A stretch of 64,000 bases of DNA from Phaeosaccion multiseriatum (GCA_965112735.1 OZ218951.1:5456001-5520000); one strand, 5' to 3'; shown: positions 26,789-34,220, counted from the first letter of the stretch. Numbers and translations: made by a program. Notes: generated by a model from the letters alone, not told the origin.

Positions 26789-29700
26789 TTAGGTGATGAC
26801 CGTAGGGCTTGTTCTGCCGGTGAAGGCCTCCAACTGAGACAACTCGAGGCCGATGTTGGCCAGCGGGGCGAGCACCTCCGCCGTCGACATGGCCTGGTAG
26901 GAAGGAAGGGAGGGAGGGAGGTAGGGGGGGGGGTGAGATGGCAGCCAATGTGAGGAACCGTTACTCCTCACCTGCTTGCTAGCTACTAAGAGTCAAGAGC
27001 TGCTCTCCTGTCTGCTGAGCTAACAAGTAAGAACTAACGGTTACAACAGTTCCTAAGGGTTACGTAACGGTTACGAACCTGCTTGCTCGGGTCGGATTCG
27101 TACTTCTCGAGGTACATGCGAATGGTGGCACCCTCAGAGCCGGTACCAGACAGCCGGAACACCACTCGGGAGCCATCTGTGAACTTCAGGCGGATGCCTA
27201 GGAGGAGGAGGAGAAGGAGGAGGAGGAGGAGGAGGGGGAGGAGGAGGAGGGGGAGGGCGGGGGGAGGGGGGAACGGAGTCAGGGCCTTGAAGAGAATGGG
27301 GCAGAGATTCGAAGAGGCACACCGTTCTACCCGCTTCCTCGCCGTCTGCGAGGAAATACACCTGCTACTACAGCTACCACTGCTCCTACTGTTACTACTA
27401 CTCCTATTGCTGCTACTGCTACCACTACTACTACTCCTACTATCCCACACCCCGCCCACACCCACCCGTTGACTTCCTACCCACCCACCTTGGTTTTTGC
27501 TGACGCTTCCATCGATGGGGTCGGTGTACTCAAAGTCGTCCACCCCCTCCAACTCGAACCCTTGCATGGCCTCGCTGCCCGCCTCGGGTAAGGGCAGGTC
27601 CTCACTCCGAAGGCGGGCCATCATGTCATCGGCCTTCTGAGCGTCGCACGCCTCGTAATCGTATCTGGGGTGGGCACACGCACGTACACACGCACGCACA
27701 TTCGCACATACACAGGGAGAGAGAGAGAGAGAGAGAGTGAGAGAGTGAGAGAGAGAGAGAGATAGAGAGAGAGAGTGTGAGAGAGAGAGAGAGAGAGAGA
27801 GACGCACACGTACACACACGAGCGCGACAGCGGTGGAGCAGCAGCAGTAGCAGTACACAGCAGCAGAAAGGCCGTTTCGAGAAGCAACGAGGGAGTGTGA
27901 TGTACTGATGTACGCACTCCTCTCCCCCTCCCCACCTGCTGTAATAGTTCCTGCCGTATTCCTTCCAGTGGTCCCTCACGATGCTCTCCACCGTCACAAG
28001 GGGCTGAGTAGAGTCAGGGTTCTTGTCGGCCAGCACAGAGAGCCACGCCAGCACTGCCCACAGACCGTCTTTCTCACGCACATGGTCACTGAGAAGGGGA
28101 GGGGAGGGAAGGAGGGGAGGGGGGAGAGTGGAGGGGAGAGGAGAGAAGAGGGAGAGAGGGAGGGATGTACAGAGGGAGAGAGAGACAAAAATTGAGCCAA
28201 GGGCGCCTCAGACCAGGATAACACAAGGAGTGGAAGGAAGGAAGGAAGGAAGGAAGGAAGGAAGGAAAGCAGGCCCGAGGAGGGAGCAAGGGAAGGCAAG
28301 CAAGCAAGGGCAGGAAGGAAGGAAGAAGGAAGGAAGGAAGGAAGGAAGGAAGGAAGGAAGGAAGGAAGGAAGGAAGGAAGGAAAGAAGGAAGGAAGGAAG
28401 GAAGGCAGGAAGCAAGGAAGGAAGGAAAGCAGGCCCGAGGAGGGAGCAAGGGAAGGCAAGAAAGCAAGGGAAGGAAGGAAGGAAGGAAGGAAGGAAGGAA
28501 GGAAGGAAGCAAGGAAGGCGCCTGCCAATCCCTCCCACCCTATGGCGTAGCGTACCACCAACTGCCCCCCCCTACCAACCCCTCCCACGTACCTGCCGGT
28601 GCCGAAGCTCTCCTCCCCACAGATGAAGGGGTGGTAGGAGCGATCGTGGCCCAGCTCCTTCGCGTCCATGAGGTTTCCGAAGAACTTCCACCCCGTGGGG
28701 GTCTCGAAGCAGGGAATGTCCTGCAAGTGTGTGTGTGTGTGTGTGTGTGTGCGCGTGTCATGTGTGTGTGTGCGTGGGGGGCGTGGGGGGATGGGTGGGT
28801 GAGCGTATGGGTCAAGGTGTGGGTGAGGGTGTGGGTGTGTGCGTCTGTGTGTCATGGGCACAGTGCTGCTGTCCTCCTTCAGTTTCAATTCATTAACCTC
28901 GATCACCACCGAACTCACAGCCTCACCACCGCTTTGCAATCAATCCAACGCACCCCCCTCCCCTCCCCCTCCCTCCCTTCCCCTCCCCTCCCCTCTCCTC
29001 CCCTCCCCCCACCCCACCCTACTCTACCCCTACCCATACCCCACCGTACCTGCTTCTCTGCCACTCTGTCTATGGCCCCGCTCGTCGGCATACTCCGCGC
29101 CACTCCCTTCACCCCGCCCCTCTCCTTGAAGTAAGGGATGGCATCCTTTGCATTGGCGGCGATGATTGCCAGGGAGTCGGAGGGCGTTACAAAAAAGCGC
29201 CTACCGATGATCATGTTGCGATCGGCGTCTCCATCCAGAGCGGCGCCGAAGTCCGGGCAGGAGGGGGCTGGGGGGGGGGGGGAAGTGGATGGCAGTGGAT
29301 GGGATGGCAGTTCATGGGGTGGGTGGGGTAGGATGGGGTGGAGAAGGAGAAACGAGGGGGGGGTGAGAGGGAGGGAGGGAGGGAGGGAGTGCACACACAC
29401 ACACGCACACGCACACGCACACGCACACGCACACGCACACACACACACGCACTCACACACGCACCCACACACACCTTCCTCTTCGGAGAGGGGCTCCCCA
29501 GCGGCGGAGAGGCCCATCTTGTTGACAAGCTCAGGGGCGTAAGTGAGGTTGGGGTCTGGATGCCCCCCCCCAAAGTCAGGAAGAGGCTCTGCTCGCATGA
29601 GAGAGTCGCCATTTGCGCCCAGCTGGTCCACCAACACGCGCTTGACGTAAGGGCCTGCAACACCCCCCATGCAGTCCACGACAAAGGAGAAGTCGGGCCG

Positions 29701-32700: not shown

Positions 32701-34220
32701 CAACAGCAGCAGGAGCAAGAGCAGCAGGTGTTGGTTAAAGCGCAATTGAAACTGCAAACAAACTAAACAGGTCCTGACTGACTGACTGACTGACTGACTG
32801 ACCTTCTGTAGGCAGTCCTCCTGCTTGAGCCTCTCTGTGACGATGTCAATCATCACTTGGTCAGGTACAAGCTCTCCCTGACAGATGACACATGGGAGGG
32901 GGGGAGGGAGGGAGGGAGGGAGGAGGGAGGAGGGAAGGAGGGAGGAGGGAAGGGAGGGAGGGAGGGAGGGGGGAAGGGAGGGAGGGAGGGAGAGGAGCAG
33001 GGAGGAGGGCAGAGAGGAGGCAAGAGAGGGCAGGATAGATGGCACCAGAAGGGGGAGGGGTGAGGTTGGGGGGAGGGAGGGAGAGAGGGTGCCCATTTGA
33101 AGACCGGGTGGGATGGCAACAGACGGATGGACCTCTTGCTCTCTCTCATCTCACCGCATCCATGAAGAACTTGGCCCCTTGTCCGACGACGGTGTTATCT
33201 TTCACAGCCTTACGCAGCATGTCCCCTGAGGAGGGAACACACAGCCAGAGGGTAGAGACGGTAGAGAGGATTGAGAGGGGGTGGGGCCGTGCCAGAGAGC
33301 TCTGCTGGGGTGGGAACGCCCCCCTGTGACCTCGGACCCTCTGGGCATACCTCTCCCTCGGGTGGCATTCGTCCTGGCATGGCCAGACTTTCCATTTGTT
33401 TGTCTGTCTGTCTGTCTGTCTGCCTGTCTGCCTGCCTGTCTATCTGCCTGCCTCTCTCGAAGCATATCCCCCACAGATATAAACACGTGTCTTTCTATCC
33501 ATCTATCAAGCAAGGAGAGAGAGAAAGGGAGAGAGGGAGAGAGAGAGGGAGGGAGAGAAACCCGTCTCTCTCCAGGAGAGAGAGAGGGGGGGAGAGAGAG
33601 AGAGCGAGAGAGACTCTGAGAGAGACAGGAGGGGGAAAGCCCCCCTCTTCGAGTGTTGCGCATCCCTGCTGGTTGCTACTCATTCCTGTGGACCGACAGA
33701 GGCACCATCCCAACCCACCTGTGGACAGGTGCACCACCCCGAAGGCCTTCTTGATCATCTCACACTGCGTGCCCTTCCCACTGGCAGGCGCTCCAGAGAT
33801 GATGATGCGAGGCCCCTGCTGCTTCACGGTGCTCCCTTCCCCGCCCCCCCCTGGTGCCACCATCCACTTTAGCCTCCGTGCAGCGGCCCCTGCTCGGCCT
33901 TGACTGCAGAATCGGCCGTCCTGCCCCTGCTGTGCGCGTGTGGGGGAGGAGGAGGAGAACACCCATCTGTTCCCGGATCCGCGCGCACCGCCATTGCTGC
34001 TACTGCTGCTCTCCGGGGTGGAGAGATTGGCGAGAGTGGGAACGAATGCATGCTCGCTTTTGGCCTGCCTATAGGATCCCCCTGCTGCTCCTGCTGCTCT
34101 CGTGGTCCAGCCTCCTCCCGCAGCCGCTGCTGAATCGGAGTGAGCGCACAGAGCGACAGCAACAAGAGCTTGAGAGACCCAGGCGTTCTCTCGCCTCTTC
34201 TGCCGCTGCTGGAAGCCCAT
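26789..34220 (-). CDS. Adenylate kinase-phosphoglucomutase fusion protein, 18 exons, with N-terminal targeting-like extension
   Basis: AK motifs: [62 protein letters not shown] motifs: [24 protein letters not shown] (catalytic Ser), DGDADRNM (metal loop), [50 protein letters not shown]. The domains are joined by phase-0 intron 31862-31699. Confidence 0.9.

What the first reader, a model, noticed from the sequence alone, without database searches (positions are those of the whole stretch)
26789..34220. Adenylate kinase fused in frame to phosphoglucomutase in one probably plastid-directed gene
Seen: six AK exons (34220-33719, 33225-33155, 32877-32803, 32651-32559, 32358-32301, 32068-31863) carry no stop codon. 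A canonical phase-0 intron (TTT|gtgagt...ctctag|GAT, 31862-31699) joins VFADIF to [38 protein letters not shown], the N-terminus of a full PGM with all catalytic motifs. The 164-nt gap leaves no room for a separate PGM promoter or leader. Known: the AK resembles the chloroplast type ([11 protein letters not shown], GRRxDPxTG LID), and stramenopiles have UGPase-PGM fusions. I do not know of an AK-PGM fusion. Inference: a bifunctional enzyme coupling adenylate charge to G1P/G6P flux. Retaining the linker intron would give an AK-only isoform that stops at 31677, a possible splicing switch.
Basis: partly seen in the sequence, partly recalled or inferred. Interest (0 to 1): 0.88.

Follow-up and report, generated by a model that had tools for sequence, protein, structure and literature searches.

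The report
Plastid adenylate kinase–phosphoglucomutase fusion gene
One 18-exon gene in this alga really does encode adenylate kinase joined to phosphoglucomutase, but the same fusion already sits unnamed in public data for several other brown-lineage (ochrophyte) algae and no paper I could find describes it.

Summary
Eighteen minus-strand exons (34220-26789), all with GT-AG introns, give one 941-aa ORF. It holds an N-terminal presequence, a complete adenylate kinase (AK), a ~15-aa linker and a complete alpha-phosphoglucomutase (PGM). AK has no stop codon. PGM has no start codon of its own: an in-frame TAG lies directly upstream of exon 7.

The fusion is not peculiar to this genome. Collinear AK-PGM proteins, 47-66% identical to the window over both halves, occur in Nemacystus, Ascophyllum, Chrysoparadoxa, Heterosigma, Florenciella and several unnamed MMETSP or metatranscriptome organisms. 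Many come from transcript assemblies. In the Chrysoparadoxa genome a single exon spans the junction.

Nine complete orthologues carry a signal peptide followed by F or W, the ochrophyte plastid signal. The window's own N-terminus is less clear.

The PGM halves group together on a tree. The AK halves do not, so the history involved fission or more than one fusion. Tribonema has the same PGM type without AK, and diatoms have the AK alone.

No RNA data exist for this organism, so neither the junction nor the proposed intron-retention switch could be tested. Functional coupling of the two enzymes is untested, and the very variable linker length argues against a fixed geometry. Five literature searches found no description of this fusion.

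The parts
33719..34220 (-). Exon 1. Holds ATG 34220, a hydrophobic signal-peptide-like stretch (34184-34143), the A|FVPTL motif (34049-34032), an S/T-rich presequence, and the AK P-loop [10 protein letters not shown] (33794-33765).
   Evidence: (ADK, E 2.4e-6)
33155..33225 (-). Exon 2 (AK, NMP-binding GDMLR region)
32803..32877 (-). Exon 3 (AK)
32559..32651 (-). Exon 4 ([10 protein letters not shown]). The intron before it is at the same position as in Chrysoparadoxa.
32301..32358 (-). Exon 5 (AK, start of the [12 protein letters not shown])
31863..32068 (-). Exon 6 ([13 protein letters not shown], core up to ...VFADIF). No stop codon.
   Evidence: (1ZAK, E 5e-11)
31699..31862 (-). Intron 6, 164 nt, phase 0, GT-AG. 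It lies inside the last AK helix. If retained it adds 61 residues and stops at 31677.
31540..31698 (-). Exon 7: end of the AK C-terminal helix (DELLGKL), linker, and the first PGM motif [12 protein letters not shown] (31620-31585). There is no in-frame ATG, and a TAG lies directly upstream.
31181..31248 (-). Exon 8 (PGM domain I). The intron before it is at the same position and phase as in Chrysoparadoxa.
30671..30971 (-). Exon 9 (PGM domain I, catalytic serine loop TASHNPGGP at 30787-30761)
   Evidence: (PGM_PMM_I, E 2e-15)
30320..30403 (-). Exon 10 (PGM)
29869..29937 (-). Exon 11 (PGM)
29475..29715 (-). Exon 12 (PGM domain II)
   Evidence: PGM_PMM_II
29050..29267 (-). Exon 13 (metal-binding loop DGDADRN at 29235-29215)
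28593..28720 (-). Exon 14 (PGM domain III, sugar-binding CGEESFGTG at 28621-28595)
27936..28088 (-). Exon 15 (PGM domain III)
27489..27664 (-). Exon 16 (PGM C-terminal domain)
27079..27197 (-). Exon 17 (phosphate-binding loop [13 protein letters not shown] at 27156-27118)
26789..26893 (-). Exon 18, ends ...GRTSPTVIT, stop TAA 26791-26789

Best explanation
The locus is a single nuclear gene for a 941-aa precursor. It consists of an N-terminal targeting presequence (~135 aa), a canonical long-type adenylate kinase, a short linker and a complete PGM1-type alpha-D-phosphoglucomutase.

Shown:
- The 18-exon ORF is continuous. AK lacks a stop and PGM lacks a start.
- All catalytic motifs of both enzymes are intact.
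- The protein is collinear with a family of AK-PGM fusion proteins in other ochrophyte algae (brown algae, Chrysoparadoxa, the raphidophyte Heterosigma, the dictyochophyte Florenciella and unnamed MMETSP taxa).
- Many of these relatives come from transcript assemblies, so the fused mRNA exists in relatives.
- The PGM halves belong to one PGM clade, distinct from the cytosolic UGPase-PGM fusion clade.

Inferred:
- The protein is imported into the plastid through one bipartite presequence, as the orthologues' signal peptide plus F/W motif indicates.
- The two enzymes then work as tethered but kinetically independent modules. The linker ranges from about 10 to about 200 residues between lineages, and the two reactions share no metabolite.
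- PGM would make glucose-1-phosphate for the plastid UDP-glucose pyrophosphorylase (sulfolipid precursor), and AK would equilibrate stromal adenylates.
- The most economical selective reason is co-delivery and co-expression behind a single hard-to-evolve targeting signal ('piggy-back' import), not substrate channelling.
For: - Gene model and frame.
- Domain identity of the window's exons: ADK, PGM_PMM_I/II/III and PGM1_C. Maize adenylate kinase 1ZAK and solved PGMs are the best PDB matches.
- Motifs present, read directly from the translation with coordinates: P-loop, GDMLR, GFPR, the GRR...RSDD LID, TASHNP, DGDADR, GEESFG and RLSGTGS.
- Collinear fusions: 47-66% identity over window residues ~130-941. 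They are named.
- Transcript-type evidence in relatives: MMETSP transcripts; Heterosigma and Florenciella UniRef entries; and ~3-kb contigs L001-L003, each holding only the complete fused ORF with short flanks. L001 and L002 come from two samples and have nearly identical ends.
- In the Chrysoparadoxa genomic locus L004 one exon encodes the AK C-terminus, the linker and [10 protein letters not shown].
- Two to three intron positions are shared with the window, in both halves of the gene.
- Window exon 7 begins with residues that align to the AK terminal helix of the orthologues.
- PGM tree: all 12 fused rows, plus 7 rows without AK (several N-terminally cut or partial), lie on one side of a 99% SH-aLRT branch. 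The UGP-PGM fusions lie in the other part of the tree.
- Plastid signal in nine orthologues.
- Linker length variation.
- Context: known stramenopile enzyme fusions, the piggy-back import idea and two plastid PGMs in Phaeodactylum (PMC2173943); plastid UGP2 linked to sulfolipid synthesis (PMC10356853).
Against: - There is no transcript evidence from this organism. The RNA runs found matched only simple repeats, and the runs that hold the locus are DNA.
- The window's N-terminus is atypical. The conserved A|FVPTL motif lies about 30 residues after the hydrophobic stretch, so plastid targeting of this copy is inferred from homology, or exon 1 is imperfectly modelled.
- The AlphaFold2 model of the Chrysoparadoxa orthologue has pTM 0.75 and a fairly confident short linker. 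That is compatible with some fixed packing of AK on PGM, which would speak against 'independent modules'.
- The AK halves are not monophyletic (AU p = 0.003 and 5e-5), so the family may not be a single vertical lineage.
- The physiological roles (sulfolipid precursor supply, adenylate balance) rest on knowledge of other organisms only.
Confidence: 0.82

Rival explanations
1. Polyprotein for piggy-back import. The fusion is translated and imported as one precursor, and is then cut in the linker, so the mature plastid holds separate AK and PGM. The fusion serves only to share one bipartite presequence.
For: The linker is poorly conserved and of very variable length. Tribonema targets the same PGM type with its own presequence and no AK, and diatoms keep the AK alone, so the two enzymes clearly work apart. 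Kroth et al. report that some diatom enzyme fusions may be cleaved post-translationally, and they propose piggy-back import (PMC2173943).
Against: No cleavage motif is conserved in the linker. In the window and in Chrysoparadoxa the linker is only ~10-20 residues and is modelled with moderate confidence. There is no protein-level data at all.
Confidence: 0.2
2. True functional coupling. The AK domain modulates or primes the PGM domain. It could set the local ATP/ADP/AMP and free Mg2+ seen by PGM, or use ATP to (re)phosphorylate PGM or to form its glucose-1,6-bisphosphate cofactor.
For: The fusion is retained across distant ochrophyte classes, with the same AK-then-PGM order and both active sites intact. 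A pTM of 0.75 for a two-module protein hints at a defined arrangement.
Against: The two reactions share no substrate. All canonical AMP- and ATP-binding residues of a normal AK are kept, which gives no sign of a new specificity. The linker reaches ~200 residues in one lineage. The fusion has been lost, or was never made, in Tribonema and diatoms.
Confidence: 0.12
3. Two genes, not one. AK and PGM are separately transcribed neighbours (or use alternative promoters or exons), and the in-frame junction is a gene-model artefact.
For: There are no RNA data for this organism. Some public annotations show the PGM alone: Ectocarpus CBJ48481.1 and Tribonema minus KAG5182433.1.
Against: AK has no stop and PGM has no start. 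A TAG closes the PGM frame right at the acceptor. Exon 7 carries the end of the AK helix. Fused transcripts exist in relatives, and Chrysoparadoxa has a single junction exon. The 'PGM-only' models start at the internal Met of GMKPGTSG or have an aberrant N-terminus.
Confidence: 0.04
4. Splicing switch. Regulated retention of intron 6 yields an AK-only isoform alongside the fusion.
For: Read-through gives an ORF ending at 31677. The Nemacystus gene set lists a second model (g14721.t2, 372 aa) that ends just after the first PGM motif.
Against: The read-through tail of 61 residues is low-complexity and unconserved. Chrysoparadoxa has no intron at this site. The Nemacystus t2 model breaks at a different intron. 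There is no expression evidence.
Confidence: 0.08

Closest known systems
Uncharacterised AK-PGM fusion proteins of other ochrophytes. Examples: Chrysoparadoxa australica CAM9235872.1, Nemacystus decipiens g14721.t1, Ascophyllum nodosum CAM9785077.1, Heterosigma akashiwo UniRef A0A6V1U1G9, Florenciella parvula UniRef A0A7S2B3Q2.
   Same: Same order of parts (presequence, AK, linker, PGM). They are 47-66% identical to the window over both domains. They share the diagnostic GMK(P/M)GTSGLRKK start of the PGM half. Two to three intron positions are shared with Chrysoparadoxa.
   Different: The window has an intron inside the last AK helix, where Chrysoparadoxa has one continuous exon. The linker is ~15-20 aa here against 10 to ~200 aa elsewhere. 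The F motif of the presequence lies unusually far from the hydrophobic stretch. None of these proteins has been studied or named as a fusion.
UDP-glucose pyrophosphorylase/phosphoglucomutase (UGP/PGM) fusion of stramenopiles (Phaeodactylum 50444; Ectocarpus, Saccharina, Nannochloropsis, oomycetes)
   Same: It is a stramenopile enzyme fusion that contains a PGM1-type PGM at the C-terminus of a two-enzyme protein.
   Different: The partner is UGPase (PF01704), which catalyses the next metabolic step, and the protein is cytosolic. Its PGM half falls in a different, well-supported clade. In AK-PGM the partners do not catalyse consecutive reactions.
Plastid-targeted stand-alone PGM of Tribonema gayanum (transcript, 659 aa) and the plastid PGMs predicted in diatoms
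   Same: The Tribonema protein has the same PGM clade and the same kind of signal peptide plus F presequence. Kroth et al. predict two plastid PGMs in Phaeodactylum.
   Different: There is no AK module between the presequence and PGM.
Chloroplast-type long adenylate kinase (maize, PDB 1ZAK) and stand-alone AKs of diatoms and Phaeomonas
   Same: The AK half is 55-65% identical to stand-alone algal AKs. 1ZAK is the best solved match. The LID lacks zinc-binding cysteines, and all nucleotide-binding residues are conserved.
   Different: Here the AK C-terminal helix runs on into a linker and a PGM.

Membership tests
Adenylate kinase (Pfam PF00406 ADK, long type) | P-loop GxPxxGKGT at the N-terminus of the domain | tested here: met
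   [10 protein letters not shown] at 33794-33765. The ADK match of exon 1 is above the curated cut-off (28.2 vs 26.8 bits).
Adenylate kinase (Pfam PF00406 ADK, long type) | NMP-binding residues (GDxLR, GFPR..Q) and a long LID with the RR...R-DD arginines and aspartates | tested here: met
   [26 protein letters not shown] and RSDDTEEK are present and invariant in the orthologue alignment. Exon 6 matches 1ZAK residues 138-204 with E 5e-11.
Adenylate kinase (Pfam PF00406 ADK, long type) | AK enzymatic activity | not testable with these tools
   Needs a recombinant protein assay.
alpha-D-Phosphoglucomutase, PGM1 type (PF02878, PF02879, PF02880, PF24947) | Four-domain architecture | tested here: met
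   Domains I, II, III and PGM1_C are each found in window exons. The window is 50-69% identical to the PGM halves of the fused proteins over ~590 residues, and 54-65% to AK-less and UGP-fused PGMs.
alpha-D-Phosphoglucomutase, PGM1 type (PF02878, PF02879, PF02880, PF24947) | Catalytic serine loop TASHNP, metal loop DGDxDR, sugar loop GEESFG, phosphate loop RLSGTGS | tested here: met
   All four are present at 30787-30761, 29235-29215, 28621-28595 and 27156-27118.
Ochrophyte AK-PGM fusion family (undescribed, defined here) | One ORF with AK N-terminal to PGM, collinear with other members over both halves | tested here: met
   BLASTP alignments span window residues ~130-941 in single HSPs to 10 or more clusters. 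Exon-by-exon identity is given.
Ochrophyte AK-PGM fusion family (undescribed, defined here) | Both halves on one mRNA | not testable with these tools
   For this organism no RNA run holds the locus. The feature is met in relatives (MMETSP transcripts and transcript-sized contigs).
Ochrophyte AK-PGM fusion family (undescribed, defined here) | Common descent of both halves | tested here: inconclusive
   The PGM halves lie on one side of a 99% SH-aLRT branch. Monophyly of the AK halves is rejected by the AU test (p 0.003 and 5e-5).
Ochrophyte bipartite plastid-targeting presequence | Signal peptide whose cleavage site is followed directly by F/W/Y/L, then a transit-peptide-like region | tested here: inconclusive
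   Window: hydrophobic stretch at residues 13-26. The first aromatic is W38 and the conserved A|FVPTL motif is at 58-63. An S/T-rich region poor in acidic residues follows (17 S+T, 3 D+E in 78 residues). Nine orthologues have the canonical motif within ~10 residues of the hydrophobic stretch. No dedicated predictor (SignalP, ASAFind, HECTAR) was available.
UGPase-PGM fusion of stramenopiles | UDPGP domain (PF01704) fused to PGM | tested here: not met
   There is no UDPGP domain in the locus. The PGM half is in a different clade from the eight UGP-PGM proteins.

The most novel reading that the evidence does not exclude
The AK module is not a passive passenger. It would be a built-in regulator or primer of plastid PGM: it could use ATP to keep the catalytic serine phosphorylated or to make the glucose-1,6-bisphosphate cofactor, or it could tie G1P/G6P interconversion to stromal energy charge. 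That would be a new way of controlling entry of carbon into plastid nucleotide-sugar and sulfolipid synthesis in algae without plastid starch.
Probability: 0.12. Interest if true: 0.8.

Novelty: new variant of a known kind. Interest (0 to 1): 0.55.

Why it matters
Stramenopile algae are known for fusing metabolic enzymes (TPI-GAPDH, UGP-PGM, G6PDH-6PGDH), and those known pairs catalyse consecutive steps. AK-PGM joins two enzymes with no shared metabolite. It is kept in several ochrophyte classes and is apparently sent to the plastid, an organelle that stores no glucan in these algae.

It is therefore a clean test case for two competing reasons why enzymes fuse. One is sharing a costly multi-membrane targeting signal. 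The other is true kinetic or regulatory coupling.

There are also practical consequences. The entries I looked up are named only 'Adenylate kinase', 'Phosphoglucomutase, cytoplasmic' or 'unnamed protein product', and several gene models appear to be split or cut at the internal methionine of GMKPGTSG. Pathway reconstructions for brown algae and their relatives are therefore likely to misplace this PGM.

Tried and rejected
- RNA evidence. Two searches for sequencing runs and one read-laying. The metatranscriptome runs X1, X3 and X4 matched only simple repeats (36-nt pieces). X8 is DNA of what is probably the source sample. No junction evidence either way.
- Self-hit. The closest relatives are Chrysoparadoxa and brown algae at about 65%.
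- ESM Atlas. It returned only ordinary PGM clusters. No large cluster has the AK+PGM architecture.
- Literature. Five searches found no description of an AK-PGM fusion. The brown-alga genomics preprint discusses domain fusions only in aggregate.
- Single origin of the fusion from the AK side. Rejected by AU tests. I do not claim one fusion event.
- A hidden intron in exon 1 (about 34150-34055) that would bring the signal peptide next to A|FVPTL. In-frame GT...AG options exist by eye in the sequence. However, the segment is G/A-rich, unlike the C/T-rich introns of this gene. Left open.
- The spliced 941-aa protein could not be passed to the database, family or structure tools, which accept only contiguous references. 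Those analyses used single exons or orthologues. Local BLAST, MAFFT and trees used the spliced sequence.
- AlphaFold2 was run on the Chrysoparadoxa orthologue. Without an error matrix (PAE), the pTM of 0.75 cannot settle whether AK docks on PGM.
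Full report
**1. What is in the sequence**

All have GT-AG borders, they total 1005 nt, and there is no stop.

I extended the model through the PGM part with twelve more GT-AG exons: 31698-31540, 31248-31181, 30971-30671, 30403-30320, 29937-29869, 29715-29475, 29267-29050, 28720-28593, 28088-27936, 27664-27489, 27197-27079 and 26893-26789. 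Together the 18 exons give one 2826-nt, 941-codon reading frame ending at TAA 26791-26789.

Intron 6 (31862-31699, 164 nt) is phase 0. In the frame of exon 7 the codon directly upstream is the TAG of the acceptor itself. The only nearby ATG is out of frame. So the PGM part can be translated only as a continuation of an upstream exon.

**2. Identity of the two halves**

- Pfam finds ADK in exon 1, and PGM_PMM_I, II, III and the PGM1 C-terminal domain in exons 9, 12, 14/15 and 16-18.
- Exon 6 matches maize adenylate kinase 1ZAK (E 5e-11). Exon 7 matches the first ~40 residues of solved PGMs.
- All catalytic and binding motifs are present:
  - AK: P-loop, GDMLR, GFPR and the GRR...RSDD LID.
  - PGM: TASHNP serine loop, DGDADR metal loop, GEESFG sugar loop and RLSGTGS phosphate loop.

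**3. The fusion is a conserved family, not a local accident**

A HMMER search with AK exon 6 against 1.84 billion representatives gave a 372-aa Nemacystus decipiens protein. It carries a presequence, AK, a linker and the first PGM motif. Its cluster holds the 937-aa full-length model.

Searches with that protein, and with a profile of five fusions, found more ADK+PGM proteins:
- Ascophyllum nodosum.
- Chrysoparadoxa australica.
- Heterosigma akashiwo (UniRef A0A6V1U1G9, 978 aa, named only 'Adenylate kinase').
- Florenciella parvula (A0A7S2B3Q2, 847 aa).
- Several MMETSP transcripts.
- JGI, ENA and Logan contigs.

The window protein aligns to them in single HSPs from about residue 130 to 941, at 47-66% identity. 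Every window exon is covered, with no indel above 8 residues against the closest members.

**4. Evidence that the junction is transcribed and translated as one unit, in relatives**

- Many members are transcript assemblies (MMETSP).
- Contigs L001-L003 are 2.9-3.5 kb and hold only the complete fused ORF with ~110-140-nt and ~130-280-nt flanks. L001 and L002 come from two samples and have almost the same ends.
- In the Chrysoparadoxa genome (L004) a single exon encodes the AK C-terminus, the linker and [10 protein letters not shown].
- The window and Chrysoparadoxa share intron positions in both halves: before GWLLDGF, before VPD (within one residue), and after NFVQ.
- Window exon 7 starts with DELLGKL. 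This aligns with the end of the AK terminal helix in the orthologues (GELDSKL, KELDSKL), so intron 6 interrupts AK itself and does not separate two genes.
- For the window's own organism no RNA data could be found. The RNA runs listed matched only simple repeats, and the runs that hold the locus contain the introns, so they are DNA.

**5. Targeting**

Nine complete orthologues begin with a hydrophobic signal peptide followed within a few residues by small-x-small|F or W. Examples are AAA|FASAG, SLG|FVAPTL, VLG|FVAPRN, VQA|FVSS, ACA|FTSS, CQA|WSP, TSA|WSP and TAA|FAPSS. This is the classic ochrophyte plastid signal (the rule itself is established knowledge of ASAFAP-type presequences).

The window has a hydrophobic stretch at residues 13-26 and a clearly homologous A|FVPTL...NRWV segment. 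That segment lies about 30 residues further on, and W38 lies in between. Plastid targeting is therefore likely by homology, but it is not demonstrated for this copy. Exon 1 may hide an unmodelled feature.

The start codon is probably right. An FKBP-type gene starts only ~170 bp away on the other strand.

**6. Evolution**

In a PGM-domain tree, all 12 fused sequences and 7 sequences without AK lie on one side of a 99% SH-aLRT branch. They are separate from plant, haptophyte and other PGMs and from the UGPase-PGM fusions.

Among those seven:
- Four are evidently cut or partial. Two begin at the internal Met of GMKPGTSG, and one of these shares a cluster with the fused Florenciella protein. Two others are N-terminally incomplete (one is flagged 'partial').
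- One (P0274) may be cut as well, since a longer cluster member carries its own presequence.
- One has a different N-terminal partner (zf-DNL).
- One (P0377) has an unrelated N-terminal extension.

A full-length Tribonema gayanum transcript has the same PGM type with its own signal peptide plus F, and no AK. Diatoms (Rhizosolenia, Aulacoseira) have the related AK alone.

The AK-domain tree is weakly resolved. It recovers the same three subgroups of fused proteins, but AU tests reject putting all fused AK halves in one clade (p 0.003; 5e-5 without the long branches). So the history includes fission or duplication of AK, or more than one fusion. I leave this open.

**7. How it most likely works**

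Shown: one ORF with two intact enzymes, and a conserved order of parts.

Inferred:
- There is a single import event through one bipartite presequence.
- After that, the two enzymes are tethered but independent. AK interconverts ATP + AMP and 2 ADP, and PGM interconverts G6P and G1P.
- They share no metabolite. The linker varies from about 10 to about 200 residues, and in one MMETSP lineage it is a tandem-repeat spacer. This argues against obligatory geometry.
- Ochrophyte plastids store no glucan. A plastid UGPase linked to sulfolipid synthesis is known in Phaeodactylum (PMC10356853), and two plastid PGMs are predicted there (PMC2173943). So supply of G1P for plastid UDP-glucose is the most plausible role of the PGM half.
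- The same 2008 paper lists the known diatom fusions and raises piggy-back import and post-translational cleavage. Those are the main rival readings here.
- The AlphaFold2 model of the Chrysoparadoxa orthologue is confident in both domains (mean pLDDT 88, presequence disordered) with pTM 0.75. That leaves docking of AK on PGM possible but undecided.

**8. Novelty and verdict**

The architecture is not new to the databases, but it is unnamed there. The entries I looked up are called 'Adenylate kinase', 'Phosphoglucomutase, cytoplasmic' or 'unnamed protein product'. The Ectocarpus reference model even lacks the first PGM motif. Five full-text searches found no paper describing the fusion.

I rate it a new variant of a known kind (stramenopile metabolic enzyme fusions) and of moderate interest. 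The proposed energy-charge coupling and splicing switch remain speculation.

Noticed in passing
window 34391-35545 (+): A head-to-head neighbour whose ATG lies only ~170 bp from the AK-PGM ATG. It is an FKBP-type peptidyl-prolyl isomerase (FKBP_C, E 6e-15 for 35333-35542). Its N-terminus looks like a signal peptide ending ...SEG|FLV, followed by a twin-arginine (RRSAIA) motif. That would make it a plastid or thylakoid-lumen protein sharing a bidirectional promoter with AK-PGM.
   Followed up: partly
window 24761-26041 (+): A 426-aa intronless ORF made almost entirely of ankyrin repeats (Ank_2, E 9e-64), convergent with the 3' end of the AK-PGM gene.
   Followed up: partly
window 26900-33700, introns of the gene: The introns are short (151-504 nt) and largely low-complexity: (CCCT)n-like C/T runs, (GTCA)n right at the donor of intron 3, and (GACA)n and (GA)n/(CA)n tracts. 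[quoted passage not shown] These repeats also caused all the spurious RNA-run matches.
   Followed up: partly
window 34143-34032 (exon 1): The conserved A|FVPTL presequence motif lies ~30 residues after the hydrophobic stretch instead of next to it. In-frame GT...AG options exist around 34150-34055, but the segment is G/A-rich, unlike the other introns. This may be a mis-modelled 5' end or a genuinely odd presequence.
   Followed up: partly
P0364 / P0436 (ENA contigs): A PGM of the same clade is fused at its N-terminus to a zf-DNL domain (PF05180), behind a signal peptide, instead of to AK. This is a second, different N-terminal partner for this PGM type.
   Followed up: no
P0239 / P0406 (MMETSP transcripts; locus L003): The AK-PGM linker is expanded to ~190 residues by four to five tandem ~30-aa repeats (…PR.(F/L/Y)GPAPG…R(P/S).Y…).
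   Followed up: no
P0420 (Ectocarpus siliculosus CBJ48481.1), P0280 (Tribonema minus KAG5182433.1), P0418: Public PGM models of this clade labelled 'cytoplasmic' begin at the internal Met of GMKPGTSG, or have an aberrant N-terminus lacking that motif. These are probably truncated or split gene models that hide the AK half or the presequence.
   Followed up: partly
P0068 (Nemacystus g14721.t2): A second predicted isoform of the Nemacystus fusion gene stops just after the first PGM motif, giving an AK-plus-linker protein. Whether it is real or an artefact of the predictor is unknown.
   Followed up: no
runs X6-X9 laid on window 28450-34400: The DNA runs of the presumed source sample show word depths of ~400-500 on unique parts, although they hold only 74-337 million letters. 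This is odd for a nuclear genome of this kind. It may reflect how the contigs' depths are summed.
   Followed up: no
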